Virus record (IMG/VR): IMGVR_UViG_3300032236_002285
Coordinates: 248,001 to 312,000 of that record
DNA: 64,000 nt
Reading direction: 5' to 3' (one strand)
Positions 7,866 to 58,276 of the stretch are shown here, piece after piece. A program made the position numbers and the translations under genes. Numbering within the stretch: position 1 is the first letter of the stretch; every line of letters starts with the position of its first letter. The notes below the pieces were generated by a model. It had not been told where the DNA came from and made no database searches. It saw only the letters and a list, made by a program, of their open reading frames with translations.

Positions 7866-7871
7866 CAACAT

Positions 7872-7943: not shown

Positions 7944-7949
7944 CAAAAC

Positions 7950-8028
7950 GCCTCAGTAGCCGAGGTCGCCTTCTAAGCGACTAATCGTAACGGAACTGAA
8001 AATGTAGGTTCGAATCCTACCTGGGGTA
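7950..8028 (+). tRNA. atypical tRNA-Arg(TCT): D-arm nearly absent, long variable region
   Basis: GCCTCAG/CTGGGGT; GTCGC-CTTCTAA-GCGAC; GTAGG-TTCGAAT-CCTAC. Confidence 0.65.
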
Positions 8029-8083
8029 CAAAAAAAAGGGACACTAGTCTTATTAATATATAAGTAAAATGTAGGTTTGTATT

Positions 8084-8914: not shown

Positions 8915-8976
8915 ACACGCTAGCCTTAGAAGCTAGTACCCGCAAGGGTGTGTGGGTTCGAGTCCCACCCTCGGTA
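8894..8976 (+). tRNA. tRNA-Leu(TAG)
   Basis: GCCGAGG/CCTCGGT; CTAGC-CTTAGAA-GCTAG; type II variable arm. Confidence 0.9.
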
Positions 8977-9001
8977 CTGAAGTGAAACGAAAGTTCACTA
9001 C
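8977..9001 (+). repeat. 25-nt tRNA-Leu 3' trailer, copy 1
   Basis: CTGAAGTGAAACGAAAGTTCACTAC, identical to 9810-9834; GAAA-capped hairpin. Confidence 0.9.
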
Positions 9002-9010
9002 AAAAAAAAT

Positions 9011-9096
9011 TGATAGGTTGCCGTAGTGGCCGAACGGTCCGGACTGTTAATCCGGTGACGAATAGTCCATCGTGGGTTCGAATCCCACCCTGTCAG
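9011..9096 (+). tRNA. tRNA-Asn(GTT) with long variable region
   Basis: TGATAGG/CCTGTCA, G73; CCGGA-CTGTTAA-TCCGG. Confidence 0.8.
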
Positions 9097-9103
9097 CAAA
9101 TAT

Positions 9104-9175
9104 AGTCCTGTAGCTTAATGGGAAAGCGCTTGCCTTACATGCAAGAGAGAGTCGGATCGTTACCGACCAGGACTA
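9104..9175 (+). tRNA. tRNA-Val(TAC)
   Basis: AGTCCTG/CAGGACT; CTTGC-CTTACAT-GCAAG; T-loop ATCGTTA. Confidence 0.85.
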
Positions 9176-9181
9176 CAAAAT

Positions 9182-9255
9182 TGGACTGTAGCTCATTTGG
9201 TTAGAGCGCCACGCTGATACCGTGGAGGTGGTCGGATCGTAACCGACCAGTCCAA
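9182..9255 (+). tRNA. tRNA-Ile(GAT)
   Basis: TGGACTG/CAGTCCA; CCACG-CTGATAC-CGTGG; T-loop ATCGTAA. Confidence 0.85.
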
Positions 9256-9261
9256 CAACAA

Positions 9262-9345
9262 GGTACTATGGCCGAGTGGAGTCTTTAAGACGGGAGGCAG
9301 TGGTCTGCAAAACTTCTCACACTGGTTCGAATCCAGTTAGTACCT
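9262..9345 (+). tRNA. tRNA-Cys(GCA) with expanded D-loop
   Basis: GGTACTA/TAGTACC, U73; loop CTGCAAA; extra GTCT-TTA-AGAC hairpin in the D-loop. Confidence 0.75.
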
Positions 9346-9350
9346 CAAAC

Positions 9351-9422
9351 GCTTCTTAAGCATTAATGGTGATGCACTAGTCTTGTAAACTAGAGAAATC
9401 GGATCGTTACCGGTAAGAAGCT
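9351..9422 (+). tRNA. tRNA-Thr(TGT)
   Basis: GCTTCTT/AAGAAGC; CTAGT-CTTGTAA-ACTAG. Confidence 0.85.
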
Positions 9423-9428
9423 CTAAAT

Positions 9429-9500
9429 TGTTCTGTAGCTCAATGGTAGAGCGCTTCTGTGACATGGAAGAGGTAGTCGGATCGTTACCGACCAGGACAA
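9429..9500 (+). tRNA. tRNA-Val(GAC)
   Basis: TGTTCTG/CAGGACA; CTTCT-GTGACAT-GGAAG. Confidence 0.8.
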
Positions 9501-9525
9501 CAAAATAATGGATGGTGATTAAGAG

Positions 9526-9598
9526 TGTTACTTCGTGAAATGGTATACACATTTGTCTTAAAAACAAACTTTTGAGGGTTCAAGTCCCTCAGTAAAAT
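9526..9598 (+). tRNA. degenerate tRNA-Leu(TAA)-like element lacking the variable arm
   Basis: Leu-type D-arm GTGAAATGGTATACAC; TTTGT-CTTAAAA-ACAAA; GAGGG-TTCAAGT-CCCTC; acceptor stem has a mismatch. Confidence 0.55.
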
Positions 9599-9625
9599 CA
9601 CTCTTTGAACTTTCCTCCATTATAT

Positions 9626-9709
9626 GCCGATGTGGCTCAGTGGCGACAGCACTGGTTTTGTAAACCAGAGACGAATAGTCCAACGGGGGTTCGAGTCCCT
9701 CCATCGGCT
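9626..9709 (+). tRNA. tRNA-Thr(TGT) with long variable region
   Basis: GCCGATG/CATCGGC; CTGGT-TTTGTAA-ACCAG. Confidence 0.85.
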
Positions 9710-9724
9710 CAAAATAAATCACCT

Positions 9725-9809
9725 GCCTGGGTGGTGGAACGGTAGACACGCTGGACTTAAAATCCAGTGGGCAGTAATGCCCGTGAGGGTTCGAGTCCCT
9801 CTCCAGGTA
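9725..9809 (+). tRNA. tRNA-Leu(TAA)
   Basis: GCCTGGG/TCCAGGT; CTGGA-CTTAAAA-TCCAG; type II arm. Confidence 0.9.
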
Positions 9810-9834
9810 CTGAAGTGAAACGAAAGTTCACTAC
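9810..9834 (+). repeat. 25-nt tRNA-Leu 3' trailer, copy 2
   Basis: Identical to 8977-9001. Confidence 0.9.
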
Positions 9835-9840
9835 TAAATT

Positions 9841-9911
9841 ATTGGGATAGTTTAATGGTAAATCGTGGGCCTGATATGCCCGTGTTCTTGGTTCGATTCC
9901 AGGTCTCAATA
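9841..9911 (+). tRNA. tRNA-Ile(GAT)
   Basis: ATTGGGA/TCTCAAT; TGGGC-CTGATAT-GCCCG. Confidence 0.8.
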
Positions 9912-9916
9912 CAAAC

Positions 9917-9988
9917 TTCGATATGGCCTATTGGTAGGGTGCAGGGGGACATGTTCCTGAGGACTTGGTTCGATTCCAGGTATCGATA
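9917..9988 (+). tRNA. tRNA-like element, anticodon undetermined (8-nt loop GGACATGT)
   Basis: Acceptor, D- and T-arms present (CTTGG-TTCGATT-CCAGG); non-canonical anticodon loop. Confidence 0.5.
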
Positions 9989-9995
9989 CAAACAT

Positions 9996-10082
9996 CGCGG
10001 GGTAGAGTAGAGGTCAAACTCACTGGGCTCATAACCCAGGGTTGCGCAAGTGACACGTCAGGTTCGAATCCTGCCCCCGCTA
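9996..10082 (+). tRNA. initiator-type tRNA-Met(CAT) with long variable arm
   Basis: Unpaired C1:U72; three consecutive G-C pairs in CTGGG-CTCATAA-CCCAG; extra GTTGC-GCAA-GTGAC hairpin. Confidence 0.8.
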
Positions 10083-10088
10083 CAACAA

Positions 10089-10161
10089 GCAGTCATCGTA
10101 TAGTAGGTGATTACACCACCTTGGTACGGTGGAGATTCCGGTTCGAATCCGGGTGATTGCT
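10089..10161 (+). tRNA. tRNA-Thr(GGT)
   Basis: GCAGTCA/TGATTGC; CCACC-TTGGTAC-GGTGG. Confidence 0.85.
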
Positions 10162-10166
10162 CAAAT

Positions 10167-10247
10167 GCCCAGATGGTGGAATGGTATACACGCCAGTCTA
10201 AGAAGCTGGTTCCTTCGGGATTGAGAGTTCGAGTCTCTCTCTGGGCA
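10167..10247 (+). tRNA. tRNA-Leu(AAG)
   Basis: GCCCAGA/TCTGGGC; CCAGT-CTAAGAA-GCTGG; Leu-type D-arm and variable arm. Confidence 0.85.
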
Positions 10248-10255
10248 CAACATAC

Positions 10256-10340
10256 GCCGGTGTGATCCGATGTGGTAATGGAGTTCGGCTCATATCCGAA
10301 TTGGTTTATCCTATTGCTGGTTCGACTCCAGCCACCGGTA
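10256..10340 (+). tRNA. tRNA-CAT (elongator Met or lysidine Ile2), long variable region
   Basis: GCCGGTG/CACCGGT; TTCGG-CTCATAT-CCGAA. Confidence 0.75.
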
Positions 10341-10345
10341 CAAAT

Positions 10346-10426
10346 GTCAGAATGGTGGAATGGTATACACGCTAGTTTCAAAAACTAGTGCCGAAAGGTA
10401 TGAGAGTTCAAATCTCTCTTCTGATA
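10346..10426 (+). tRNA. tRNA-Leu(CAA)
   Basis: GTCAGAA/TTCTGAT; CTAGT-TTCAAAA-ACTAG. Confidence 0.88.
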
Positions 10427-10448
10427 CTCGATAAAATAAAAAATAAAA

Positions 10449-10730
10449 ATGGAAAAGATTATCGACATCGTTAGAGATAACGTTGCAAGATTCGACTGGG
10501 CTTCTGAAGGAGTCCTCTACTACAAAGTAGAAACTGAAAAATATATCTATCACTTCCCAGTAGATATGAATAACAAAGAAGATGTGGGAACAGCTAATTT
10601 TGAATCAGAACATAAGGCTATAAATCTTATGAGATATTTAAGAAAAGCATCAGAAAACTTAGAAAAAATTAAAAACGATTCAGGTACGCCTGATTGGAAA
10701 AAGACATTAAGAGTTACACAAAAAGTATGA
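10449..10730 (+). CDS. hypothetical phage protein
   Basis: 93-aa ORF; its TGA overlaps the LeuRS ATG (ATGA). Confidence 0.6.
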   Translation: MEKIIDIVRDNVARFDWASEGVLYYKVETEKYIYHFPVDMNNKEDVGTANFESEHKAINLMRYLRKASENLEKIKNDSGTPDWKKTLRVTQKV

Positions 10731-11992
10731 AAGATGAAAAGTATATATGCGTTATGTTTCCTTACCCAAGTGGTTCGGGATTGCATGTAGGTCACTTTTA
10801 TAATTATGCTATAATTGATTCTTATTGTAGATACTTTAAATACAAAGGTCAACAAGTTTTTCAACCTTTTGGTTATGATGCCTTTGGTTTGCCGGCTGAA
10901 AACTATGCTAGAAAAGTAGGTCGTGATGCTAAAGATGTTACCTATGAAAACATCAGTCAATTTAGAAAACAGATGGAAAAGATGGATACCAACTATCAAG
11001 AAATGTTGGTAACATCTGATCCTTCTTATCAAAAATGGACACAATGGTTGTTTTTGAAATTGAAAGAACATGGCTTGGCTTATAAAAAAGATGGTGAAGT
11101 AAATTGGTGTCCTTCTTGTGAAACCGTATTGGCTCGTGAACAAGTTAAATCTGATTGTTGTGAAAGATGTTCAACTAAGGTAGAAATGAAAACAATGAAT
11201 CAGTGGTACTTTAAGATTACTGATTATAAAGAACGTTTGATTAAAAACTTGGATTGGATAGATTATCCAAAATCAACTATTAACGCGCAAAGAATGTGGT
11301 TGGAAAACTTGCACGATTGGTGTGTTTCTCGTCAAAGAAAATGGGGCTGTCCAATTCCAATAGAAGGTGAAACCGATACAATGGATACATTTGTAGATTC
11401 TTCATTTTACTATGTTAGATATTGTGATGCTACTAATGATAATGAATTGTGTGCTAAAGATAAATATAAACAAGTAGATGTTTATGTTGGTGGTAATGAA
11501 CACGCTTGTATGCACTTGATTTATGCTCGTTTTATTAATATGTTTTTGTATGATATTGGTGTTGTTTCAGAGGAAGAACCATTTAAGAAAGTTATACATC
11601 AAGGTATAATTTTGAACGAAGGTGAAAAAATGTCTAAAACAAAAGGTAATGTTATTAATCCAGATGATTATGACTCTGATGAATTGAGATTTTATATGAT
11701 GTTTATTGGTCATTATTTTGATGGTGGTTCTTGGTCTGACCAAAATATAGCTGGTATTAAAAGATTTATTAGTCGTTTTAAGGAGTGGATGTCAAGAGAA
11801 GGTTCTGATACTTTTGATATTGAATCATTTAAGAAAAAAATATTTAACTACACTGAGAGTTTTAAGTTTAATAAAGTTGTTAGTGAGTTTATGACAATAG
11901 TTAATCAAAATAGAACTAAAAACATAACACCTGAGATAAAAAAAGAATTGATTGAATTGATTAAGGTGTATATGCCTGGAATTAAAATTTAA
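10727..11992 (+). CDS. leuS: minimal leucyl-tRNA synthetase lacking the CP1 editing domain
   Basis: MFPYPSGSGLHVGH (HIGH), FGYDAFGLPAENYA, DWCVSRQRKWG, ETDTMDTFVDSSFYY, EKMSKTKGN; about 421 aa; start moved to ATG 10727. Confidence 0.9.
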   Translation: MKDEKYICVMFPYPSGSGLHVGHFYNYAIIDSYCRYFKYKGQQVFQPFGYDAFGLPAENYARKVGRDAKDVTYENISQFRKQMEKMDTNYQEMLVTSDPSYQKWTQWLFLKLKEHGLAYKKDGEVNWCPSCETVLAREQVKSDCCERCSTKVEMKTMNQWYFKITDYKERLIKNLDWIDYPKSTINAQRMWLENLHDWCVSRQRKWGCPIPIEGETDTMDTFVDSSFYYVRYCDATNDNELCAKDKYKQVDVYVGGNEHACMHLIYARFINMFLYDIGVVSEEEPFKKVIHQGIILNEGEKMSKTKGNVINPDDYDSDELRFYMMFIGHYFDGGSWSDQNIAGIKRFISRFKEWMSREGSDTFDIESFKKKIFNYTESFKFNKVVSEFMTIVNQNRTKNITPEIKKELIELIKVYMPGIKI

Positions 11993-12368: not shown

Positions 12369-14600
12369 TTACCAAGTTATATCATTAATTTGATAATTAA
12401 TACTACCTAAGCCAGAACCTGTAGTAAATGTTTTAAGGGTATTACCTGAACCAAGAACATAAGTGTAGTTATTTGAATTATCGTGGAATGATGCAATTAA
12501 ACGACCATTGTAATAATCATAACTATCATTGTGTTCAAATCCATTAATAATATCTAAAGTGTTACCACTAAAGTCTAAAAGTTTAACACTCCAACTACCA
12601 GAATATGTTCCACTTGTATTGCTATATATACCCATAATCCTATCCAAACCAATTATAAAATAACTAGAGTTCATTGAATCACTACTTACTTCAAACTTAC
12701 TAGACATGCTATTTTTATTAACAAGTCTGTAATAAGGACTACCTGAGTTATAAATAATAGTAGTATTATCAGTGTAATCAAAATCTGAACCTTGTTGTGT
12801 TTCGGTCCAACCATAAGCAACATTGTCAAAAGTACTAAATGATCCACTTAATTTATTACTATACCAATCATTACCATCACCATCGGTGAACATAAATACA
12901 TCCCCAAGAGAATAGCCTATATTACTTGGTGATGTTCCATTCATAGTTTGTTCATCTAATTTAGTACCACTTGAATTAAAAGTTAAAGCAGTTGTACCAC
13001 CTGAGTTATTAACATAAACAGCATAGTATTTATCATCACCACCTGATAGATATTGAAAAGAAGAAAAATCTGTTAATGCAAAGTCTATATTACTTGTGCG
13101 TGATAAATACTTAATACTATAAACATCACCAGAACCATCATTAGTTCTAACTGATAAATATATACCATCTTTAGTTATTCTATTACTCCACTCATAATAG
13201 TTATTGTTACCACTATTAGAAAGTGCAACCGTTGTAAAATCATGACCTGGATATTTCATTAATGCTGTCCAGTTGGCTGAATAATCTGTTAATAAAATAA
13301 ATAAGTTTTCAGTAGATACCGGATCATCAGGATCGGTAGCATCTATATAATCCGCAAAAGCATATTGATCATTAAATAAAGAACTATCATAGGTATGATA
13401 ATCAAAAGTATCTGCATCACCATCATACACAACATAAGTATTTTGACTACCTGTATATGGACTATATAATTTGTAATAAAATTTATTATTACCATAAAAG
13501 TCGAAATTATGATTACCATATTGATAATCTGATGTTGATCCTAAATCAGCATAAACATTTATTCTTCTAATAGATGTACCACTAGTACTATAAACATCAA
13601 TATAATCTAAATAGCTATATGTAGTATCATAGTTAAAGAAAGCGATAACGTTTGATCTATAACCAACAACATAAGAACCGTGTCTATCTGATGTGTAAAC
13701 TAAACTCACAGCACCTGTATTAGTGTCAATTAAATAAGTATCATGATAACTAGATTGATAAACTCTAAAAAGAACGACATTACCGCTTCTTGAATAGTAA
13801 TCATAAGAGCCACCAAACCAATAAGTTTGAGAGTTAGGAACATTAAAAGTAGTTTTTTCTGACAAACCTGTATAAGTTATATAATCATAACCACCAGATA
13901 AATCATCTACAACAAATGTTATACCTTTTTTATAATTATGATAATCCCAACTGGCTACATTACTATCATAAGTATCTGAATATTGAATCACCCCATCAGG
14001 ACCAACAAATACCATTTTATACATATTACTATCACTATCATTAGTAAAGGTATACATTATATATCTTCCATCAACGGTATCATAGTATTGATAATTCCAG
14101 TCACTAGATGATAATCCAGAATCAATATCAGATATTAAAGTATCAGTTGTATAATTCATAACTGAAAATCCAAAATTTCCACTATTCATTACATAGTTAA
14201 AGAAAATTGCATCTCCTGAATTAAAATTACTAATGATGGTTCCATAGTTAGGAGAACTATTAAGCCAAGTTTTAGCATCATCAACATTTGAAAAAGTACC
14301 AGGACTTCCAGGTAATCTATTAATTAAGTGTAAAAGATCTGAATTTGTTTTTGTTGGAGTTTTCCAAAATGTCGGTTTATTAGGATCTGCGATACCTTTA
14401 CCACCAGCAGTTGTTCTACCTGCTAAGTTTGTTGAAGTTGTATCTGAATAAATAACATACCCTGATACATCATCAAGACCTGCTATCCAACCACCTGTTG
14501 TGTAATCAACTGCACCAGTTGCAACTGCTAAATTTCCTATTTGAGTAGCACCAGTAATTGGTGTTTTACTTGGATTGTACTTTACATCATATTTTGCCAT
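12369..14600 (-). CDS. putative virion structural protein (beta-rich, Ser/Tyr/Asp/Asn-rich; tail fibre/appendage-like)
   Basis: 743 aa, composition typical of fibre or propeller proteins; late motif at 14629-14637. Confidence 0.45.
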   Translation of the reverse strand: MAKYDVKYNPSKTPITGATQIGNLAVATGAVDYTTGGWIAGLDDVSGYVIYSDTTSTNLAGRTTAGGKGIADPNKPTFWKTPTKTNSDLLHLINRLPGSPGTFSNVDDAKTWLNSSPNYGTIISNFNSGDAIFFNYVMNSGNFGFSVMNYTTDTLISDIDSGLSSSDWNYQYYDTVDGRYIMYTFTNDSDSNMYKMVFVGPDGVIQYSDTYDSNVASWDYHNYKKGITFVVDDLSGGYDYITYTGLSEKTTFNVPNSQTYWFGGSYDYYSRSGNVVLFRVYQSSYHDTYLIDTNTGAVSLVYTSDRHGSYVVGYRSNVIAFFNYDTTYSYLDYIDVYSTSGTSIRRINVYADLGSTSDYQYGNHNFDFYGNNKFYYKLYSPYTGSQNTYVVYDGDADTFDYHTYDSSLFNDQYAFADYIDATDPDDPVSTENLFILLTDYSANWTALMKYPGHDFTTVALSNSGNNNYYEWSNRITKDGIYLSVRTNDGSGDVYSIKYLSRTSNIDFALTDFSSFQYLSGGDDKYYAVYVNNSGGTTALTFNSSGTKLDEQTMNGTSPSNIGYSLGDVFMFTDGDGNDWYSNKLSGSFSTFDNVAYGWTETQQGSDFDYTDNTTIIYNSGSPYYRLVNKNSMSSKFEVSSDSMNSSYFIIGLDRIMGIYSNTSGTYSGSWSVKLLDFSGNTLDIINGFEHNDSYDYYNGRLIASFHDNSNNYTYVLGSGNTLKTFTTGSGLGSINYQINDITW

Positions 14601-14696
14601 AGTGATTAAAATTTTTTATTTTATAGATTATATATTAAAATACCAAATAAACATTTTACAATCTCAGTTTTTTTCCATAAATTTGTAATCTAATTA

Positions 14697-14834
14697 ATGA
14701 GTATTTGTACAAAACTACAAACAATAACAGGTATACATAGATATCTTTTCAGACTACTATTTGTGATATGGTTCATCAATAGCGCATGGGCTTTATTTTG
14801 GTATATAGTGATTGGATTAATTATAGAAGATTAA
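14697..14834 (+). CDS. small predicted membrane protein (45 aa), not in the ORF track
   Basis: MSICTKLQTITGIHRYLFRLLFVIWFINSAWALFWYIVIGLIIED; TAAATTTG box at 14678-14685. Confidence 0.5.
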   Translation: MSICTKLQTITGIHRYLFRLLFVIWFINSAWALFWYIVIGLIIED

Positions 14835-14866
14835 TAAATTTATATTAAAAAATAATATATATGGAC

Positions 14867-16486
14867 ATGAAATACATTAAAACTAGAAATAGATTTCTTG
14901 CTGAATCAAAAGGTGAAATGAGCGACAACGCTCTTCATACACTTGCGACTCATGATGATGGACAATCTCCTGATGTTCAAAAAAGTTTGGATGCACTTGA
15001 CGAGGTTTCTCCTAAAGGTAAAGTGGTAACTCGTTTTGCTCCTTCACCAACAGGATTTTTACATATCGGAGGTGTTCGTACAGCTCTTTACAACTACTTG
15101 TTTGCTAAAAAACACGGTGGTATCTTTTATGTTCGTATTGAAGATACTGACCAAAAACGTTTTGTAGGCGATGCTGAAAAATATATTCAAGACGCTTTAG
15201 AATGGTGTGGTATTGACCCAGATTATGCACCTTGGAAAGGTGGTCCTAATGGACCTTACCGCCAATCGGAAAGAGATTATTCTGGTCATATTCAAACTCT
15301 TTTAGATAAGGGTATGGCTTACTATGCTTTTGATACAGAAGATGATATGGTTAAAGTAAGAGCTGAAAATGCTCACTTTGCTTACGATACTAAAACTCGT
15401 ATGTCAATGAAGAACTCACTCTCTTTATCTAAAGAAGAAGTTGATGCACTTCTTGCTGCTAATACTCCATTTGTAATTCGCTTCAAAACACCAGAAAATA
15501 GAACTATCACCGTTAATGATGTAATTCGTGGTGAAGTTAGTTTGAATACAAATCAAACTGATGATAAAGTTTTGGTTAAATCAAATGGTATTCCTACATA
15601 TCATATGGCTAACGTATGTGACGACCACGATATGGGAACTACTCACGTTATTCGTGGTGAAGAATGGTTGCCTTCAACTCCACTTCACTTAATGTTATAT
15701 GAAGCATTTGGTTGGGAAGCTCCTACATTTGCTCACCTACCTCTAATTTTGAATCCTGATGGTAAAGGTAAGTTGTCTAAACGTAAAGCTTTAGCTTTAG
15801 GTATTCCAGCTTTCCCAATGGGTGGTGAAGGTGAAGATGATAAAGGTCAAAAAGTAAAGTATCTTGGTTTCAAAGATGAAGGTTTTGAACCACAAGCTAT
15901 GTTGAATTTCTTGGTGCTTTTAGGTTGGTCCCCAACAGATACTCAAGAACTTATGACTATGGCTGACATGATTTCTAAATTTGACTTAGCTCATGTTCAT
16001 AAGGCTGGTGCTCGTTTTGATGTTGAAAAAGCTAAACACTTTAATGCTCAACACTTGAACACTTATAGAAGTGATGAAGAAATTCTTTCACATATTGATA
16101 TGGGTGATACCTATCATTACTCACCAGAAAATCTTTCTAAGATTGTGGATATCTGTAAAAAGAGAGCAGTCTTTACTAAAGATTTACAAGCTGTTGCTGA
16201 TATCTTCTTTAAGCCAATTGTGATTAAAGAAACAGATGTTAAGTTATTAACTGATGATTACAAAAAAGTATTCTCAGTTTTTGTAACTAAGTCAATTGAT
16301 TGGACGGCTGAAACTATTAAACAAACAATTCACGACATTTGTCAAGAAATAGGTGTTAAAATGGGTAAGATAATGCCTGCTTTAAGATTGGCTATTGCTG
16401 GTGGATTACCAGGTCCAGATTTGGCAACAACAATGGAAATAATTGGTAGGGATGAAACCTTAATAAGAATTAAAAACACTTTATAA
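14867..16486 (+). CDS. gltX: glutamyl-tRNA synthetase with ~50-aa N-terminal extension carrying the capsid-targeting-like tag
   Basis: VVTRFAPSPTGFLHIGG, RIEDTD, HVIRGEEW, KLSKRK; starts MKYIKTRNRFLAES 5 nt after TAATATATA (14853-14861). Confidence 0.92.
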   Translation: MKYIKTRNRFLAESKGEMSDNALHTLATHDDGQSPDVQKSLDALDEVSPKGKVVTRFAPSPTGFLHIGGVRTALYNYLFAKKHGGIFYVRIEDTDQKRFVGDAEKYIQDALEWCGIDPDYAPWKGGPNGPYRQSERDYSGHIQTLLDKGMAYYAFDTEDDMVKVRAENAHFAYDTKTRMSMKNSLSLSKEEVDALLAANTPFVIRFKTPENRTITVNDVIRGEVSLNTNQTDDKVLVKSNGIPTYHMANVCDDHDMGTTHVIRGEEWLPSTPLHLMLYEAFGWEAPTFAHLPLILNPDGKGKLSKRKALALGIPAFPMGGEGEDDKGQKVKYLGFKDEGFEPQAMLNFLVLLGWSPTDTQELMTMADMISKFDLAHVHKAGARFDVEKAKHFNAQHLNTYRSDEEILSHIDMGDTYHYSPENLSKIVDICKKRAVFTKDLQAVADIFFKPIVIKETDVKLLTDDYKKVFSVFVTKSIDWTAETIKQTIHDICQEIGVKMGKIMPALRLAIAGGLPGPDLATTMEIIGRDETLIRIKNTL

Positions 16487-16518: not shown

Positions 16519-18798
16519 CTATTCAAATAGTGGGAATTTTGGCAAATATAGTCTCGTAGTGGCGTTATCTGCAAATATCATATATTTAGAATCATCTCTA
16601 ATAACATATTGATTAAGTATTTTATTATGAACATCAGATGGTATAATATCTGTAAACATTCTAATATTAGTTATTCTCATATCAGAAGCAAGTATATCAA
16701 GATTTGTATTTTCAAGTTGATATTCAATTGGTATAATATTTTGAGTACTATTATACTCTAATCTAAGTATAGTTGATGTTAAATTAGGAGCATCACTTTC
16801 CTCTTCTACATTTCTCTTATAGATGAATTGACTCATAGTTCTTTGTCTTTGGTCTATATTAAGAACATAACAATACCAAACATCTTCTTGAAGTGCTGTA
16901 TTATCACTTGATGCATGTCCTAATAGATCATAGTTATAAGTATTTGAATTTAAAGTAACTTGTATAGCATCATTTACCAAATTAACTTTCCAACCTAGTG
17001 AGTTAGTAACATCATAATAGTTCATAAAGTTATAAACCTCATCTGTTATATAATTATTAATCTTAAACCAAAGCATATATCCAATATTATCAGATACTTT
17101 AAGAATTGGATCAAAGTTTTGATAGGTAACTGCAACTTGCTGATAATTTACGGTAGACAAGTCATAATTAGCCTTACTAATAATAGTTGAAGAGTTTTCA
17201 ATTAATTCTTTATCAATTGTTGCATTATAACTTAATCTAATAGGATCGGATGATAATGGTGTAAATTGTTGCTTATTAGCAATTGAAGCTTTATCTTGAG
17301 CATTCTCAATGCCAAATAACTCATCAATAGTAGAGTTCTTGGTAAGTTGTTGTAACTTGTCTTTGATTTCCTGAGTACCAGCTTTGACATTTGCTTTTTG
17401 AGTGTATTTCTTCAATATCAATTTATAGTAAATAGCTGAGTTATTGAAGTTTCTAAATTGCTGAGCATGGTCAACTTGAAACATTCTATTAACATCACAG
17501 AAATACAAGAAATCTTCTTTTGAAGGTCTTCTTTGAGGTCCAAAAATTTCTTTGAATTGCTTTTTAGTTATATGAACCGTCATGTTTTCAAATAAACTTA
17601 AATCAAATTGATTCATTACTATTTGAGAATCTGGGAAATTATTACCATCAACTGCTACTTTTAAGTTACCTTCACATACTACATTATATAATTGATACTC
17701 ATGCATTGTATGGTCTTGACCTCTTTTATCTGGATCAGTAACAAAGTAAATAACTCTATGTCCAAACATTTGCTCAGAATCAGCACTTAATTTATTCAAT
17801 AAATCCATAGCAGTGTTTTGCTTGTAAGGATTAAATAAGTTAGCTTTATCTTGAGAATTCAATTGTGGTAAAGTTGAACCATTACCAGTTGTATCACAAG
17901 CACCAGAAGAATTTGAAATACCACCACCAACACCAGTACCTGAACCATTTGTATTATCAGCAGGTATAAAATTACCACTTGGATCCACATAACCTACTAA
18001 GTTAGATTGACAACACTCTCTAATACCATAAAGATTAGTTTTGAAATAATCTTGACTGACATTTTGAAAATCACCAATTAAATTAATATCTTGAATACTT
18101 TTAACTGATTGAGAGTTATTTGTTATTGAGTATTCTATTTGGAAAAATCTAATAGGATTAATTCTAACCGTTGTTATATTTTCTTTAGTAAATGGTTCCC
18201 AATTAGACCAAGTTCTTGAATTATCTTGTGAGAATCTATATTTAATATCAACATCAACCGTTCCTGTTGCTGATATAATTTCTAAGTCACTTATATTAAA
18301 AACTTTATAAATAAATGGAGCTTTCCAAATAATATTATCACCAGGCACTAAACTAATAGTACTAACACCATCACCAGCATTTTCAGCAACAACTCTTTCG
18401 AGTTTACCGCCAATTGAGTATTCTAAAATTCTAATAGCACCAACAGCAGATGAACCAGATCTAACCCATTTAATATCTAAATAAAGTGGGTCTTTGGTAT
18501 CAATAGTTGGGAAGTTATCAATAGCTCTTTTTAGATCAAACCAATCAGTCCAAGCATTACCATCTCTTGATATGCGATAATAGTTTTTCAAAAATCTAGT
18601 ATCAGTCATACCTAAAGTATCATACTTAAATGTTGTTAATTCTTTAACATTTTGTAAATTAACAAAACTTATTGTATATTCGGATCCGATTGAATTGAAA
18701 TATGGCGTCGCATCAACTGAATTGACTTGAGCATTTATATCAAATTTATCAGATATATCAATGGTGCCGTTTTCTAAGTTTGAAACTATTTGTTGCAT
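16519..18798 (-). CDS. neck/head-closure (T4 gp14-like domain) multidomain structural protein
   Basis: Central FGHRVIYF..FDLSLFENMTVHITKKQF..RRPSKEDFLYF..MFQV resembles gp14; LamG-like C-terminus; late motif at 18803-18811. Confidence 0.55.
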   Translation of the reverse strand: MQQIVSNLENGTIDISDKFDINAQVNSVDATPYFNSIGSEYTISFVNLQNVKELTTFKYDTLGMTDTRFLKNYYRISRDGNAWTDWFDLKRAIDNFPTIDTKDPLYLDIKWVRSGSSAVGAIRILEYSIGGKLERVVAENAGDGVSTISLVPGDNIIWKAPFIYKVFNISDLEIISATGTVDVDIKYRFSQDNSRTWSNWEPFTKENITTVRINPIRFFQIEYSITNNSQSVKSIQDINLIGDFQNVSQDYFKTNLYGIRECCQSNLVGYVDPSGNFIPADNTNGSGTGVGGGISNSSGACDTTGNGSTLPQLNSQDKANLFNPYKQNTAMDLLNKLSADSEQMFGHRVIYFVTDPDKRGQDHTMHEYQLYNVVCEGNLKVAVDGNNFPDSQIVMNQFDLSLFENMTVHITKKQFKEIFGPQRRPSKEDFLYFCDVNRMFQVDHAQQFRNFNNSAIYYKLILKKYTQKANVKAGTQEIKDKLQQLTKNSTIDELFGIENAQDKASIANKQQFTPLSSDPIRLSYNATIDKELIENSSTIISKANYDLSTVNYQQVAVTYQNFDPILKVSDNIGYMLWFKINNYITDEVYNFMNYYDVTNSLGWKVNLVNDAIQVTLNSNTYNYDLLGHASSDNTALQEDVWYCYVLNIDQRQRTMSQFIYKRNVEEESDAPNLTSTILRLEYNSTQNIIPIEYQLENTNLDILASDMRITNIRMFTDIIPSDVHNKILNQYVIRDDSKYMIFADNATTRLYLPKFPLFE

Positions 18799-18910: not shown

Positions 18911-20146
18911 ATGATGAATATAAAAGACAAGTTTATTGAGTTAACAAGTAGAACATATCCTCACGGAACTGAGGAAGATGTTTTTCCTTTGTTAAACCCT
19001 GAACTACAAAAAGATGAGTTTAATAACCTTTTTATTAAAATTGGTGAAAGTGATGTTATGTTTACATCGCACTTAGATACTGCAACATCTGCACTTACCT
19101 CTGTTAGTCACGTTTTTGATGGTAACATAATTAAGACAGATGGTAAATCTATTTTAGGTGCTGATGATAAAGCAGGTGTTACTATTATGCTTTATATGAT
19201 TGAAAATAAAATCCCAGGACTTTATTACTTTTTCTTAGGTGAAGAAGTAGGTTGTATTGGTTCTAAGAAAGTTTCTAATAAATATAAAACTGAAAAACTT
19301 GAAGGTATCAATAAAGTAATTTCATTTGACCGTAGAGGTACCGACTCTGTTATTACTTTTCAATCTAGTCAAAGATGTTGCTCTGATAAATTTGGTGAAG
19401 AATTATCTAAACAATTAAATTTAGCAAATGATACTTTTTCATATAAGAATGACCCAACTGGTATCTTAACTGACTCTATTCAATTTATTAGCATTTATCC
19501 AGAGTGTACTAACATTTCTGTTGGTTATCGTTCAGAACACACATTTGCTGAACAACAAGATATTGAACACTTGACTAAATTAGCTGAGGCTTGTTTGAAA
19601 GTAGATTGGAATGGTTTACCTGTTGAAAGAGATCCTTCTAAAACTGAATACAAATCATACGGTGGTTACGGTGGATATGGTTGGAGTGATTGGGATGATT
19701 ATGACTACGGTTATAAAACAACTACCAATAACACTTCAAAGTGGAATTGGAATAAAAATGTAACACCAAAGACTGATAAAATTTGGTTCCACGATAAGAA
19801 ATATAACTATGTTTCTAATGTAGAACTTGATTCTTTAACTAAAAAAGTTATATCAGTTGATTTGTGTAAAGAACGTGTTGAGTATGAAAAGATGATAGTT
19901 GAAGATTTATTAATGTCATTGGATTTAAGTTATAAAGATTTTACTTGGGATGGTTTTAAGTTGAAAGTATTCTATAAGCAAAATGCTGGTGACCACACAA
20001 CAGAGTGTGATCGTAATGACTTGTTAGAATATTTACCTGAACTTGACTATTCAAATGGTGATGATTTAGGTGATTATAAGAGTAACACAAATGAATTTGA
20101 TGATTTTACTGATTCTTCAGAATTTAATTACTCAGAATTTGACTAA
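18911..20146 (+). CDS. M28/M20-family zinc peptidase
   Basis: FTSHLDT, ILGADDKAG, FFLGEEVGCIGS, ISFDRRG metal-binding motifs. Confidence 0.8.
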   Translation: MMNIKDKFIELTSRTYPHGTEEDVFPLLNPELQKDEFNNLFIKIGESDVMFTSHLDTATSALTSVSHVFDGNIIKTDGKSILGADDKAGVTIMLYMIENKIPGLYYFFLGEEVGCIGSKKVSNKYKTEKLEGINKVISFDRRGTDSVITFQSSQRCCSDKFGEELSKQLNLANDTFSYKNDPTGILTDSIQFISIYPECTNISVGYRSEHTFAEQQDIEHLTKLAEACLKVDWNGLPVERDPSKTEYKSYGGYGGYGWSDWDDYDYGYKTTTNNTSKWNWNKNVTPKTDKIWFHDKKYNYVSNVELDSLTKKVISVDLCKERVEYEKMIVEDLLMSLDLSYKDFTWDGFKLKVFYKQNAGDHTTECDRNDLLEYLPELDYSNGDDLGDYKSNTNEFDDFTDSSEFNYSEFD

Positions 20147-23257: not shown

Positions 23258-23329
23258 AGTCCGTGGGTATGTTGGTATGAATAACCTCCTGTCACGGGGA
23301 AGAAGCCGGTTCGATTCCGGTACGGACTG
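23258..23329 (+). tRNA. tRNA-Asp(GTC)
   Basis: AGTCCGT/ACGGACT, G73; loop CTGTCAC. Confidence 0.85.
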
Positions 23330-23334
23330 CAAAA

Positions 23335-55528: not shown

Positions 55529-56104
55529 TTAAATGAAATAACCTTTTAAGAAATCAATTAATCTATTACCAACTTCAATTTTCTCTTCGTTTGGATTCCA
55601 CATTGGTCTTTCATAAGCCCAATTTGCCAAAACCTGAGCTTTTGTAAGATATTCTACAGCATCTTCTAAAATAGTAATAATTTGTTCTGGTTCAACATTT
55701 TCACCTTCCTCAATATGCTTTTTAAGATCTTCAACAGAATCATCAAATCCCATTTCAATAGTACCTATAATAGCTTGAAATGCTACTTGTAAGGCTTGCA
55801 TATTATATTCGGATTTAAGTTTCTCTAACTTGTTATCCATAACTAAAACTCTAAATTTAAATTGATCCTCATCTGATAAATCATACTTATCAACCATGTC
55901 TTCAATGATACTTAGAATATCTTCACCATCAGAGACTCTATACATAAACTCTTGTTTATTTGACTTTGGTAAAGCTTTAGCAAATTGCTCAGCTTGATAT
56001 CCAATATTATATTTATCGGGGTTAGCATTATATGATTTTATAGTTGATTTAAAATCATCAGATAATGATTCAATAAATAATTTAAAGTTTTTTATATTTT
56101 TCAT
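55529..56104 (-). CDS. hypothetical protein, MKNIKNFKLFIES tag family
   Basis: N-terminal tag. Confidence 0.6.
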   Translation of the reverse strand: MKNIKNFKLFIESLSDDFKSTIKSYNANPDKYNIGYQAEQFAKALPKSNKQEFMYRVSDGEDILSIIEDMVDKYDLSDEDQFKFRVLVMDNKLEKLKSEYNMQALQVAFQAIIGTIEMGFDDSVEDLKKHIEEGENVEPEQIITILEDAVEYLTKAQVLANWAYERPMWNPNEEKIEVGNRLIDFLKGYFI

Positions 56105-56889
56105 TTTGATTTAATTACTTTTATTCTTTCCAATTGATACTTCATAATATCAACTTCTTGATTCTGTTTTAAGAAATCAACTATTTTTTGATACATCTGT
56201 ATGGTAATCCTGCAGTCTGTAAGAGCATCGTGATAGTTTGTCATATTAATTCCAAGCGCTGGTCCTACTTTAGACATTGATGATGATATTAATCCACCAT
56301 CTCTATCAGATGTTCCAATAAAATTAATTATATCTTTATATTTAACATCAGTTTCAGCCAATGCTTGTAATAGTGGTAGGTAGTATAATTGAATTAACAT
56401 CTTAGTGTCAAATACTTCATTCTTAATTTTATGACCATATCTACCAGATAACATAGCCATATCAAAAGCAGCATTTTGTGCTATAAGTAAACAAGGTTCG
56501 TAATTACCAACCCAATCAAAGAACTGATCTAATATTTCTTGTTCATTTTTATATTTGAACTTACCGGAACCATAATGATTGAATCCTAAAACCCATTTAG
56601 TTTTATCACCAGGTTTACTAAATTTTGACTTAGTTTCATCAGTTAGTTTAATCTTCTCATCAAATAAACCTAATTCTTTGAATGTATTTGAATTAAAATT
56701 ATAATCAGTAGACAAACAAGATACTTGAGTTAATTGTTGTTTCTTAGGACCACCCAACCCAGTCGTCTCGGTATCTATGAACAACCACTTTAAATTAGAT
56801 TTTGACTCAATCCAATTGAGAATCTCTGGTATACTTTTATACCACATCTTATTCTCATTAATTAATTCACTATATTTTAATATTTTCAT
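56101..56889 (-). CDS. DEDDh 3'-5' exonuclease (DnaQ-like) with N-terminal tag
   Basis: FIDTETTG, AQNAAFD, HDALTDC; MKILKYSELINE; late motif at 56894-56902. Confidence 0.8.
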   Translation of the reverse strand: MKILKYSELINENKMWYKSIPEILNWIESKSNLKWLFIDTETTGLGGPKKQQLTQVSCLSTDYNFNSNTFKELGLFDEKIKLTDETKSKFSKPGDKTKWVLGFNHYGSGKFKYKNEQEILDQFFDWVGNYEPCLLIAQNAAFDMAMLSGRYGHKIKNEVFDTKMLIQLYYLPLLQALAETDVKYKDIINFIGTSDRDGGLISSSMSKVGPALGINMTNYHDALTDCRITIQMYQKIVDFLKQNQEVDIMKYQLERIKVIKSK

Positions 56890-56984: not shown

Positions 56985-57746
56985 ATGAAAAATTGTTTAA
57001 AGTGTAATGAGGATATAACAAAAAGAGGTGCTAGATTTAAATATTGTAAAGAATGTTCAGAGATATCAAAAAAAGAATCTTATAAAAAATATCTAAGTAG
57101 TGAAGATGTTAAAATTTCAAAAAATAAATATAGCAAAGAATATTACAAAGAAAATAAAGACAAATTAAAACCAGTTAGAAAAAAATGGAGGGAAACTAAT
57201 TCACAAAAAGAGAAAAATTACAATAAAGATAGATATCAATCATTTGATAAAGAAAGATTATCAAACTACTACACCGAGAATAAAGAAGAAATAAATAGAA
57301 AAAAATTAGAATATAGAAAAACTGAAGAGTATAAAAAATGGATATCTGAATATAGAATAAAAAATGCTCATAAGCAAAGATATAGAGATTCATTAAAATC
57401 TGTTATTAGGCGACTTAACCGTGATAAAAATGATTATACAAATAATCTATTAGGATATAGTGATTTAGAATTTAAGTTACATATAGAAAGCCAATTCACT
57501 GAAAAAATGAGTTGGTCTGAAAGAAAATCATTTGAAATTGACCATATCATACCAATAGTTGCTTTTATAGAAAATACTCCTTTGTCTATTGTTAGTTCTT
57601 TAGAAAATTTAAGACCAATGGATCCTGAAGATAATATTAAAAAATATACATCTCTGGATTATAACTATATTGAATTGTATGAAAAATATATTGAATTTTT
57701 AACGGATGATTATAAGAGTAAGGTATTGGATTATATTTCAAAGTAA
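56985..57746 (+). CDS. HNH homing endonuclease
   Basis: N-terminal CxxC..CxxC; FEIDHIIPI..SLENLRPM..NIKK. Confidence 0.8.
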   Translation: MKNCLKCNEDITKRGARFKYCKECSEISKKESYKKYLSSEDVKISKNKYSKEYYKENKDKLKPVRKKWRETNSQKEKNYNKDRYQSFDKERLSNYYTENKEEINRKKLEYRKTEEYKKWISEYRIKNAHKQRYRDSLKSVIRRLNRDKNDYTNNLLGYSDLEFKLHIESQFTEKMSWSERKSFEIDHIIPIVAFIENTPLSIVSSLENLRPMDPEDNIKKYTSLDYNYIELYEKYIEFLTDDYKSKVLDYISK

Positions 57747-58276
57747 ATCTTTTCACCATTTGATAGTGAATAACAAATTTTATTTACATTCTTAACTTCG
57801 TATTTATAATCGGGTTTTACATATTTCTTACCAGTTCCTTTCTTAACATAAGAAATTGTAATATGTGGCTTGTAATCAGGGAATTGATCCGAGTTAGGAA
57901 ATTTAGACAACTCATCGTGTAAATGTTGTAAAGCACCATCCGGTATTACATTAAACTTAACAACATCAAATTTATCGTTTTTTTCAAATATACCTATACC
58001 ATCTACTTTAATATTAATATCATCTGAATAGTTCTCAAATACTGATTTAACCATTTCAGGAGTTACATCATCATGTAAACCATATAAAATAGTAACATGT
58101 GGATTATCTTGAATGCCTTTAGGATCATCATTTTCATCACCGTAAAATATGTCTTCTGGATCAATAGATGATGTTATTTCATCCCAGTTACTTACCGGAA
58201 TATTAATCATTACACAGCCATATTTATGACCGTTAATTGATTCATTTACAAATTGTATATAGTTTTTAATTATCAT
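57731..58276 (-). CDS. 2H phosphoesterase, T4 gp57B/Acb1-like, with N-terminal tag
   Basis: Two HxT motifs, PHVTILY and FPDYKPHITISY; begins MIIKNYIQFVNES. Confidence 0.75.
   Translation of the reverse strand: MIIKNYIQFVNESINGHKYGCVMINIPVSNWDEITSSIDPEDIFYGDENDDPKGIQDNPHVTILYGLHDDVTPEMVKSVFENYSDDINIKVDGIGIFEKNDKFDVVKFNVIPDGALQHLHDELSKFPNSDQFPDYKPHITISYVKKGTGKKYVKPDYKYEVKNVNKICYSLSNGEKIYFEI

What the first reader, a model, noticed from the sequence alone, without database searches (positions are those of the whole stretch)
14853..16486. GluRS with a capsid-targeting-like propeptide: a possibly virion-packaged tRNA synthetase
Seen: ~50 extra residues before VVTRFAPSPTG, starting MKYIKTRNRFLAES, expressed from the late motif. 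LeuRS and GlnRS have neither feature. Established: GluRS is the target of the HipA toxin kinase; the target Ser in KLSKR is retained here. Inference: an injected GluRS could restore or buffer Glu-tRNA charging at the start of infection, or act as a kinase decoy.
Basis: partly seen in the sequence, partly recalled or inferred. Interest (0 to 1): 0.75.

Follow-up and report, generated by a model that had tools for sequence, protein, structure and literature searches.

The report
Glutamyl-tRNA synthetase carrying capsid-targeting tag
A 476-kb freshwater phage encodes an intact-looking glutamyl-tRNA synthetase whose extra N-terminal peptide matches the tag that phage T4 uses to load proteins into its head, so the enzyme may be carried in the virion and injected with the DNA; no proteomic data exist to confirm this.

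Summary
The GluRS gene (true start most likely ATG 14867, stop 16486) has 51 residues ahead of the catalytic core. A TAATATATA motif lies 5 nt upstream; genome-wide this motif marks late and structural genes.

The extension starts MKYIKTRNRFLAE. It belongs to a family of N-terminal tags on about 60 otherwise unrelated proteins of this phage. The tag consensus, [YFW]xx[FY][ILVM]xE, has the same spacing as the four functionally mapped positions of the T4 capsid targeting sequence MKTYQEFIAE. The phage has a T4-type portal, major capsid protein and head protease. The protease ORF carries about 13 tandem YSEY[LI]AE repeats, which is the tag motif itself.

35 protein clusters from related huge phages keep the GluRS extension. 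Untagged GluRS genes occupy the same locus in the closest relatives.

Virion packaging, with cleavage after FLAE, is therefore the best-supported reading. It remains inferred, for these reasons:
- There is no proteomic evidence.
- The GluRS tag is a variant lacking one aromatic residue.
- Two T4 proteins not known to be in the head also match the motif.
- Residues 14-51 are conserved but unexplained.

The HipA-decoy idea has no specific support, because the KLSKR serine is kept by nearly every GluRS compared. Other tagged proteins include RNA ligase, CCA-adding enzyme, a kinase and a 2H phosphoesterase.

The parts
14853..14861 (+). Late-class promoter motif TAATATATA, 5 nt upstream of the ATG at 14867. 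This spacing implies a leaderless or near-leaderless mRNA.
   Evidence: The same motif lies 3-9 nt before the ATG of 69 genes (this one included) and 14-40 nt before 75 others, including the portal, major capsid protein, protease, tail sheath and a tail fibre.
14867..16486 (+). Glutamyl-tRNA synthetase gene: 539 aa plus stop, about 60.5 kDa, pI 5.9.
   Evidence: Best solved relative is 6brl_A, E 4e-149.
14867..14905 (+). N-terminal tag MKYIKTRNRFLAE (residues 1-13). Proposed capsid-targeting propeptide with an L-A-E site; predicted cleavage between E13 and S14.
   Evidence: A PSSM built from 22 other tagged proteins scores it 12.3 bits. That ranks 22nd of 615 N-termini, and only 6 of 121,031 internal positions score as high. 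F of F[ILVM]xE is at index 9, inside the modal window 7-9. Nearly invariant in 35 homologue clusters.
14906..15019 (+). Rest of the extension (residues 14-51). It is acidic (pI 4.4) and has conserved blocks DDAL.ILA..D..Q and LD.LD. Function unknown.
   Evidence: The AF2 model gives pLDDT below 50 with three short helices.
15020..15793 (+). Class-I catalytic domain, with HIGG at 15062-15073 and KLSKR at 15770-15784.
16118..16480 (+). Anticodon-binding domain (Pfam Anticodon_2).
14678..14685 (+). Host-type (Bacteroidota sigma-A, -7 box) promoter element TAAATTTG ahead of the small upstream ORF. Possible source of early read-through into the GluRS gene.
14697..14834 (+). 45-aa hydrophobic ORF directly upstream. 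It is conserved in the same position in L041 and L051.
12369..14600 (-). Neighbouring late-motif gene, 743 aa, rich in Y/N/S/T/D/G, with no family match. Possibly structural.
16519..18798 (-). Neighbouring late-motif gene, 759 aa, no family match. It is syntenic with GluRS in relatives (65-81% identity).
56101..56889 (-). Another tagged protein in the window: a DnaQ/RNase T-type exonuclease starting MKILKYSELINEN. Late motif 4 nt upstream.
57731..58276 (-). Another tagged protein in the window: a 2H phosphoesterase (2'-5' RNA ligase / Acb1-like) starting MIIKNYIQFVNES.

Best explanation
The gene encodes a complete, probably active bacterial-type GluRS (shown by sequence) fused to a 51-residue N-terminal extension.

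The first 13 residues, MKYIKTRNRFLAE, are one copy of a tag that this huge, T4-related, Bacteroidota-infecting phage places at the N-terminus of about 60 unrelated proteins (shown).

The inferred mechanism follows T4 internal proteins and Alt.
1. The tag is a short amphipathic helix resembling one unit of the phage's own scaffold repeat (YSEY[LI]AE...). It docks the protein into the scaffolding core while the prohead assembles.
2. The gp21-type head protease then cuts after the Glu of L-A-E (E13|S14).
3. The enzyme stays in the head and enters the next host with the DNA.

There it could charge tRNA-Glu before any phage gene is expressed; the phage carries four tRNA-Glu genes. This would matter if the host's Glu charging is shut down by starvation, a persister state or a defence system (speculative).

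The late-class promoter directly upstream fits production at the time of head assembly. An early-type promoter further upstream may also supply enzyme during the infection itself.
For: (1) The extension is real and under selection.
- There are 51 residues ahead of the core compared with solved GluRS.
- 35 protein clusters at 90% identity keep it, with MKYIK.R..F[LIV].E nearly invariant.
- Bacterial GluRS and a second phage GluRS type lack it.

(2) A tag family exists.
- [YFW]xx[FY][ILVM]xE starts at residue index 3-6 in 21 proteins, against about 1 expected from the internal rate.
- With looser forms, about 60 proteins carry a tag, and their bodies fall into 57 unrelated groups.
- Codons vary synonymously and conservatively, so selection acts on the peptide.
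- The GluRS N-terminus scores 12.3 bits on a PSSM built without it.
- Another protein starts MKWIKDREKFLNEAK, the same variant form.

(3) The tag matches the T4 CTS.
- IPII and IPIII start MKTYQEFIAE.
- In T4, residues 4 and 7 carry targeting and residues 8 and 10 carry processing (PMC9026906). These are the Y, F, I/L and E of the tag.
- The T4 gp23 maturation site FGSFLTE fits the same pattern.

(4) The machinery is present.
- T4-type portal, E 4e-60, and gp23-type capsid protein, E 6e-27.
- A head maturation protease, phrog_207 E 1e-31, with a weak Peptidase_S77 match.

(5) The protease ORF carries about 13 tandem 14-residue repeats YSEY[LI]AE.LDKNI.. They are conserved in LR756502 and LR756504.

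(6) Timing fits.
- The motif class holds structural genes, whereas TAnnTTTG genes are DNA-metabolism genes.
- Tags associate with the late motif, odds ratio 4.2, p 5e-7.
- A late-type motif precedes tagged GluRS in 6 of 10 lineages but untagged GluRS in 1 of 9.

(7) The tag family recurs in relatives: 9 of 179 genes in LR756504 and 6 of 138 in LR756502.

(8) AF2 gives the extension pLDDT below 50, detached from the body.

(9) In tags defined without reference to Glu, 26 of 42 have Glu within 3 residues after the second aromatic, against 8 expected.
Against: - No virion proteome exists for this phage or any tag-bearing relative.
- The GluRS tag lacks the aromatic residue three positions before F, the equivalent of T4 position 4, which is a targeting determinant. 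It has Tyr seven positions before F instead.
- In T4 the same pattern also begins gp61.1 and UvsW.1, which are not known head proteins. So only 2 of 4 matching gene starts in T4 are proven CTS.
- Tagging about 10% of the proteome is a large share, and it includes proteins with no obvious reason to be packaged, such as a DeoC aldolase and a methyltransferase.
- Residues 14-51 are as conserved as the enzyme body, which a removable tag does not explain.
- Some tagged homologues have only host-type promoters (L104, LR756504).
- This gene has an early-type box 180 nt upstream with no terminator between.
- Tags are most frequent (32%) on genes with the motif 3-9 nt from the ATG, so a link to leaderless translation is not fully excluded.
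Confidence: 0.5

Rival explanations
1. The tag is a clade-specific N-terminal module unrelated to the capsid. It might help translation or folding of proteins made from leaderless, SD-less mRNAs, or dock proteins to some other phage structure or chaperone. Under this view, its likeness to the T4 CTS and to the scaffold repeat reflects only a common amphipathic-helix pattern.
For: - Tags are most frequent on genes whose ATG lies 3-9 nt after the promoter motif: 22 of 69, against 9 of 75 and 29 of 471 in the other classes.
- In T4 the pattern also starts gp61.1 and UvsW.1, which are not known head proteins.
- About 10% of the proteome carries a tag, including metabolic enzymes.
Against: - More than half of the leaderless-type genes are untagged, and 38 tagged genes are not of that type.
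- Conservation is at the amino-acid level, with Y/F/W and I/L/V exchanges.
- A Glu at fixed spacing is enriched even when it is not part of the definition.
- The identical motif is repeated about 13 times inside the protease-scaffold protein of three phages.
Confidence: 0.27
2. The extension is an appended synthetase domain, as in many aaRS. The conserved blocks at residues 14-51 would bind a partner (another synthetase, a tRNA-handling protein or a regulator), and the N-terminal 13 residues would simply be part of that domain.
For: - Residues 14-51 are conserved across 35 clusters.
- They form three predicted helices.
- No other protein of the genome shares this part.
Against: - The segment is acidic (pI 4.4), so direct tRNA binding is unlikely.
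- The first 13 residues match a tag found on unrelated proteins.
- This reading does not exclude packaging.
Confidence: 0.15
3. Kinase decoy: the phage GluRS soaks up HipA-type kinases that phosphorylate the serine of KLSKR in host GluRS.
For: - HipA phosphorylates the conserved Ser239 of E. coli GltX (PMC6581861).
- The phage enzyme has KLSKR.
Against: - The serine is present in 10 of the 11 GluRS aligned in each of two alignments, phage and bacterial. It is part of the class-I catalytic loop, so its retention carries no information.
- One untagged phage homologue (L051) has KLAKR instead.
- No HipA homologue or host genome is linked to this phage.
- A few dozen injected molecules could not titrate a kinase.
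Confidence: 0.04
4. The start codon is mis-called and the extension is untranslated 5' sequence.
For: In-frame Met codons exist at residue 18.
Against: - Amino-acid-level conservation extends to the first Met in 35 clusters.
- The internal Met is not conserved; for example it is absent in L044.
- The promoter motif lies 5 nt before ATG 14867.
Confidence: 0.02

Closest known systems
Phage T4 capsid targeting sequence (CTS) of internal proteins IPII/IPIII (MKTYQEFIAE), IPI and Alt, removed by prohead protease gp21
   Same: - It is a short N-terminal peptide on otherwise unrelated proteins.
- The pattern is aromatic-x-x-aromatic-[I/L]-x-Glu.
- The phage has a T4-type portal, capsid protein and gp21-like protease.
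- It is expressed with the head genes.
   Different: - The cargo here is a housekeeping translation enzyme, not a small basic internal protein or an ADP-ribosyltransferase.
- About 60 proteins are tagged, against a handful in T4.
- The GluRS tag is a spaced variant, with Tyr seven rather than three residues before Phe.
- The scaffold region fused to the protease is itself built of tag-like repeats, which T4 gp22 is not.
- Nothing here has been tested experimentally.
Ejection and inner-body proteins of phiKZ-like giant phages (SPN3US, 201phi2-1), processed at [A/S/G]-x-Glu by a gp21-related protease
   Same: - Many head-internal proteins are loaded through N-terminal propeptides.
- They are cut after Glu and injected into the host (PMC5694885).
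   Different: - Those propeptides are mostly over 100 residues long and the P3 residue is small.
- Here the tags are 10-15 residues with I/L at P3, as in T4.
- The capsid lineage is different.
Aminoacyl-tRNA synthetases of huge phages (Mahaphage clade; Al-Shayeb et al. 2020)
   Same: - It is a GluRS related to Bacteroidota enzymes, in phages of 0.4-0.7 Mb that also carry many tRNAs.
- The closest capsid relatives are LR756502/LR745206 (69%) and LR756504 (54%).
   Different: - That work treats the enzymes as intracellular helpers of translation.
- In the library searched, I found no N-terminal tag, late promoter or packaging described for them.
Bacteroidota-type bacterial GluRS (solved structures 6brl/6b1z)
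   Same: The catalytic and anticodon-binding domains align end to end, E 4e-149, with HIGH and KLSKR motifs intact.
   Different: The bacterial enzyme starts about 10 residues before the core; the phage enzyme has 51.

Membership tests
Class I glutamyl-tRNA synthetase (GltX type) | Catalytic Rossmann domain of the Glu/Gln class (Pfam tRNA-synt_1c) | tested here: met
   E 1.4e-91, residues 54-311 of the 541-aa form. Aligns with 6brl_A over 486 residues.
Class I glutamyl-tRNA synthetase (GltX type) | HIGH and KMSKS-type signature motifs | tested here: met
   HIGG at residues 66-69 and KLSKR at 302-306.
Class I glutamyl-tRNA synthetase (GltX type) | Bacterial GluRS anticodon-binding domain | tested here: met
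   Anticodon_2, E 2.7e-24.
Class I glutamyl-tRNA synthetase (GltX type) | Charges tRNA-Glu | not testable with these tools
   Four tRNA-Glu genes are present in the genome.
T4-type capsid targeting sequence / gp21-cleaved propeptide | Short peptide at the extreme N-terminus, shared by otherwise unrelated proteins of the same phage | tested here: met
   21 strict and about 60 loose tags, falling into 57 unrelated body groups. The GluRS scores 12.3 bits on the family PSSM.
T4-type capsid targeting sequence / gp21-cleaved propeptide | [I/L]-x-Glu processing site at the end of the tag (T4 positions 8 and 10) | tested here: met
   L11-A12-E13, followed by Ser. E is nearly invariant in 35 clusters.
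T4-type capsid targeting sequence / gp21-cleaved propeptide | Two aromatic residues three apart (T4 positions 4 and 7, the targeting determinants) | tested here: inconclusive
   Phe10 is present, but residue 7 is Arg and the other aromatic is Tyr3, seven residues before Phe. One other protein clearly shares this variant. The LR756504 homologue has the canonical YSDFLKES.
T4-type capsid targeting sequence / gp21-cleaved propeptide | Phage encodes a gp21-family head protease with a scaffolding core, a T4-type portal and a T4-type capsid protein | tested here: met
   phrog_207 E 1e-31, with Peptidase_S77 E 1e-5 (below Pfam cut-off); Portal_T4 E 4e-60; Gp23 E 6e-27. Scaffold-like repeats.
T4-type capsid targeting sequence / gp21-cleaved propeptide | Protein is made when proheads assemble | tested here: met
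   Late-class motif 5 nt upstream. This is a sequence inference only; no transcript data were available.
T4-type capsid targeting sequence / gp21-cleaved propeptide | Protein is found in virions with the tag removed | not testable with these tools
   The phage is uncultivated. The cultured relative PTm1 lacks the tags in the 45 kb examined.
HipA-kinase target or decoy | Phosphorylatable Ser in the KLSKR loop | tested here: met
   Present, but also present in 10 of the 11 GluRS in each alignment, so it does not discriminate.
HipA-kinase target or decoy | A cognate HipA-type kinase in the host that acts on this protein | not testable with these tools
   The host is unknown beyond probable Bacteroidota.

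The most novel reading that the evidence does not exclude
This clade of huge Bacteroidota phages uses a T4-like tag, modelled on its own scaffold repeat, to load dozens of unrelated enzymes into the head. The tagged set includes:
- GluRS
- a CCA-adding enzyme
- an Rnl1-type RNA ligase
- a P-loop kinase
- a 2H phosphoesterase (Acb1-like)
- an exonuclease

The virion would then deliver a ready-made tRNA-charging, tRNA-repair and anti-defence kit together with the DNA. The packaged proteome of uncultivated huge phages could also be read directly from sequence.
Probability: 0.3. Interest if true: 0.85.

Novelty: new variant of a known kind. Interest (0 to 1): 0.7.

Why it matters
As far as I could find, aminoacyl-tRNA synthetases of huge phages have been read only as intracellular helpers made after infection. 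A synthetase carried in the particle would be a new class of injected cargo. It would mean the phage can start translation in hosts whose charging system is shut down.

More generally, the tag gives a sequence-only way to predict which proteins an uncultivated T4-related huge phage packages. That set appears rich in tRNA-repair and counter-defence enzymes. The match between the tag and the scaffold repeat also suggests a concrete mechanism for how T4-type targeting sequences work, which is still unresolved for T4 itself.

Tried and rejected
- Megablast of the locus against phage records found nothing.
- Complex prediction of the protease-plus-repeat region (residues 1-450) with GluRS residues 1-60 gave no verdict (score 0.02). 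It counts neither for nor against binding.
- PHROGs and Pfam gave no hits for ten of the larger tagged proteins of unknown function, nor for the two genes flanking GluRS.
- The cultured relative Tenacibaculum phage PTm1 has a fused scaffold-protease, but no tag family in the 45 kb examined. Its virion data therefore cannot serve as a proxy.
- A search for sequencing runs found only DNA metagenomes (freshwater) and one RNA run with 5% of the sampled words. Transcript starts could not be checked, and read laying was not used.
- I expected a strict link between the tag and a late-only promoter. It does not hold: several tagged homologues have both promoter types or only the host type.
- A T4 control for motif specificity gave 2 proven CTS among 4 matching gene starts.
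- I considered a requirement for leaderless translation and judged it unlikely.
- I rejected paralogy as the source of the shared N-termini.
Full report
**What is there.** The window is bases 248001-312000 of a 476,236-bp viral record with 30% G+C, estimated 97% complete. The ORF at 14861-16486 (+) encodes a class-I glutamyl-tRNA synthetase. It has Pfam tRNA-synt_1c (E 1e-91) and Anticodon_2 (E 3e-24) domains. HIGG and KLSKR motifs are present. It aligns end to end with a solved bacterial GluRS (6brl_A, E 4e-149). That alignment begins at query residue 52, so about 50 residues at the N-terminus are extra.

**Which start codon.** There are two ATGs, at 14861 and 14867. The second is the better start. 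The sequence TAATATATA (14853-14861) overlaps the first ATG and ends 5 nt before the second, which is the modal spacing in this genome. Most homologues also begin at MKYIK.

**The phage.** The major capsid protein is of the T4 gp23 type. Its closest relatives are uncultured phages of 630-735 kb (LR756502 and LR745206 at 69%, LR756504 at 54%, LR756501 at 52%). More distant relatives are Lak phages, Tenacibaculum phage PTm1 and Sphingomonas phage PAU. This is the 'Mahaphage' group of Al-Shayeb et al. 2020, predicted to infect Bacteroidetes (PMC7162821). A Bacteroidota host fits two further findings: the TAnnTTTG promoter boxes and a protein with a type-IX secretion CHU_C domain. The source samples are freshwater metagenomes.

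**Two promoter classes.** T[AT]ATATATA occurs 193 times, and 151 of 615 crude gene calls have it within 100 nt upstream. The distances fall into two sharp classes, 3-9 nt and 14-40 nt. Genes in this class include the portal, capsid protein, head protease, tail sheath, a tail fibre and most of the largest ORFs. Genes without the motif are enriched for TAnnTTTG, the Bacteroidota sigma-A -7 box. The largest of these are helicases, NAD ligase, an SbcC-like protein and an HNH enzyme. So 'late motif' is a fair name, and GluRS has it. There is a caveat: a TAAATTTG box at 14678-14685 drives a 45-aa ORF just upstream, and no terminator intervenes. Early read-through is therefore possible.

**The extension is conserved.** Four viral contigs (63-91% identity) and LR756504 and LR756501 carry GluRS with N-terminal extensions. 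Bacterial GluRS and a second phage type (46-51% identity, starting M..IVTRIAPSPTG) do not. A search restricted to residues 1-60 found 35 clusters at 90% identity, on contigs of up to 770 kb. In these, MKYIK.R..F[LIV].E is nearly invariant. Two further blocks, DDAL.ILA..D..Q and LD.LD, are also conserved. AlphaFold2 gives residues 1-50 a pLDDT below 50, as three short helices detached from a confident body.

**Synteny.** The downstream 759-aa gene is 65-81% identical in L041, L051, L046 and LR756502. The small upstream ORF recurs in L041 and L051. The untagged GluRS type therefore sits at the same locus in the closest relatives. The tagged and untagged forms are alternative occupants of one site.

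**A genome-wide N-terminal tag.**
- BLAST of the extension against the phage's own proteins hit other N-termini, such as MKWIKDREKFLNEAK and MIKKYNQFLNESK.
- The pattern [YFW]xx[FY][ILVM]xE starts at residue index 3-6 in 21 proteins. About one is expected from its internal frequency.
- F[ILVM]xE has its F at index 7-9 in 20 proteins, against about 1.3 expected. The GluRS F is at index 9.
- With the looser form M[KR]x[ILV][KR]x[YFW]xx[FYL], about 60 proteins are tagged.
- With the first 22 residues removed, these fall into 57 unrelated groups, so the tag is modular and not inherited by paralogy.
- Codons at the conserved positions vary (TAT/TAC/TTT/TGG; ATT/ATA/TTA/CTA/GTA; GAA/GAG), so the peptide is what is selected.
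- A PSSM built from 22 other tags scores the GluRS N-terminus 12.3 bits. That is rank 22 of 615, and only 6 of 121,031 internal positions score as high.
- The family recurs in LR756504 (9 of 179 genes sampled) and LR756502 (6 of 138), including orthologues of tagged proteins here.

**Link to the head.**
- T4 IPII and IPIII begin MKTYQEFIAE, and IPI begins MKTFKEF....
- Mutational work summarised in PMC9026906 places targeting at residues 4 and 7 and processing at residues 8 and 10. These are the Y, F, I and E that define the tag here.
- The T4 gp23 maturation site FGSFLTE fits the same pattern.
- This phage has a T4-type portal (E 4e-60), a capsid protein (E 6e-27) and a head maturation protease. 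The protease matches phrog_207 at E 1e-31 and Peptidase_S77 at E 1e-5, the latter below the Pfam cut-off.
- The most telling point concerns that protease. It is the N-terminal third of a 720-aa ORF (genome 59876-62038, outside the window). Residues ~255-445 of that ORF are about 13 tandem 14-residue repeats, YSEY[LI]AE.LDKNI. Each repeat contains the tag motif and an [L/I]-A-E site, and the GluRS tag ends in FLAE.
- The same repeats occur 11 times in the homologous ORFs of LR756502 and LR756504.
- PTm1 annotates its homologue as 'prohead core scaffolding protein and protease'.

My inference is that the tag mimics one scaffold repeat. It would co-assemble with the core and be released by cleavage after Glu.

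**Timing.** Tags associate with the late motif (31 of 60 against 113 of 555; odds ratio 4.2, p 5e-7) and not with the early box. A late-type motif precedes tagged GluRS in 6 of 10 lineages and untagged GluRS in 1 of 9. However, some tagged genes have both promoter types or only the host type. Early synthesis does not preclude later packaging, so this evidence is weakly supportive.

**What else is tagged.** The tagged proteins with a recognisable family are:
- an Rnl1-type RNA ligase
- a P-loop kinase (AAA_33 / zeta-like)
- a CCA-adding or poly(A) polymerase-family enzyme
- a 2H phosphoesterase (also matching Acb1)
- a DnaQ/RNase T exonuclease
- a methyltransferase
- a DeoC aldolase

Together with GluRS, many of these act on tRNA or RNA. 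This suggests, but does not show, a packaged repair and counter-defence kit.

**Weaknesses.**
- Nothing here shows the protein in a particle.
- The GluRS tag is a variant, with Tyr seven rather than three residues before Phe. One other protein clearly shares that form. The LR756504 homologue has the canonical YSDFLKES.
- In T4, the DNA-level pattern hits four gene starts: ipII, ipIII, 61.1 and UvsW.1. Only the first two are known head proteins.
- Tags are commonest (32%) on genes whose ATG follows the motif by 3-9 nt. More than half of such genes are untagged, and 38 tagged genes lie elsewhere.
- Residues 14-51 are conserved and unexplained.
- The complex prediction returned no verdict.

**HipA idea.** HipA phosphorylates the conserved Ser239 of E. 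coli GltX (PMC6581861), and KLSKR is present here. The serine is kept in 10 of the 11 GluRS in each of two alignments, so its retention is uninformative. A decoy role for a few dozen molecules is implausible. A catalytic 'bootstrap' role after injection is conceivable but speculative.

**Verdict.** The capsid-targeting reading is the best-supported explanation at about 0.5 confidence. The main rival is a capsid-unrelated N-terminal module (about 0.27). The finding is a new variant of the T4 CTS system, with an unprecedented cargo and scale.

Noticed in passing
genome G000:C1:60638-61210 (outside the window; protease-scaffold ORF 59876-62038): About 13 tandem 14-residue repeats, YSEY[LI]AE.LDKNI., lie in the C-terminal part of the head-protease ORF. 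They are followed by an acidic His/Glu-rich segment. The repeats are conserved in LR756502 and LR756504.
   Followed up: yes
window 55529-58704 (-): Four consecutive genes all start with the tag: 55529-56104 (unknown function), 56101-56889 (DnaQ/RNase T exonuclease), 57731-58276 (2H phosphoesterase, Acb1-like) and 58273-58704 (unknown function).
   Followed up: partly
window 123-1536 (+) and 4578-6903: Six further small tagged genes start MKHIKTYKLFES, MKHLKTYKIFEN, MKHLKSYKVFES, MKHLKKYNES, MRYLKLYEEFEG and MRYIKTYESYK. Most have the late motif 4-5 nt before the ATG.
   Followed up: partly
window 10727-11992 (+): A LeuRS-like class-Ia synthetase fragment of about 420 aa starts MKDEKYICVMFPYPSGSGLHVGH. 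No Anticodon_1 domain was found anywhere in the genome, so it is a truncated or split enzyme, not a full LeuRS.
   Followed up: partly
window 7698-10427 and 23258-24289: The window holds 27 tRNA genes in two arrays (53 in the whole genome). ARAGORN reads two with abnormal anticodon loops: a 4-base 'acat' at 9917-9989 and a 2-base 'gt' at 23550-23621. GlnRS starts 19 nt after the third tRNA-Gln.
   Followed up: no
window 1565-4501 (-): A 978-aa protein carries a C-terminal CHU_C type-IX secretion sorting domain. This is a Bacteroidota-specific signal inside a phage genome.
   Followed up: no
window 36643-38775 (+): A ClpA/ClpB-type double AAA+ ATPase (AAA_2, ClpB_D2-small) is encoded by the phage.
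   Followed up: no
window 18911-20146 (+) and genome 64612-65967: Two paralogous peptidase-like proteins (phrog_4191; weak Peptidase_M28 match). One lies two genes downstream of the major capsid protein gene and carries an internal tag-like site, VIRKYGRFINELKA.
   Followed up: no
whole genome: The promoter motif T[AT]ATATATA sits at two sharply separated distances from start codons, 3-9 nt and 14-40 nt. The first class implies leaderless mRNAs. Early genes use the host TAnnTTTG box.
   Followed up: partly
L051:2995-4449 (untagged GluRS of a 385-kb relative): The signature loop reads KLAKR instead of KLSKR, so the serine that HipA targets in E. coli GltX is replaced by alanine in this phage enzyme.
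   Followed up: no
T4 record AF158101: 19101-19130 (-) and 114210-114242 (+): T4 gp61.1 (MKTFKEFIKE) and the ORF starting MLLEFKQFLYE inside the annotated uvsW (from memory, UvsW.1) begin with CTS-like sequences, yet they are not listed as head proteins.
   Followed up: partly
whole record: IMG/VR classes the 476-kb record as 'provirus'. Its content (T4-type head and tail genes, 53 tRNAs, no evident host flank in the parts examined) looks like a free huge-phage genome.
   Followed up: no
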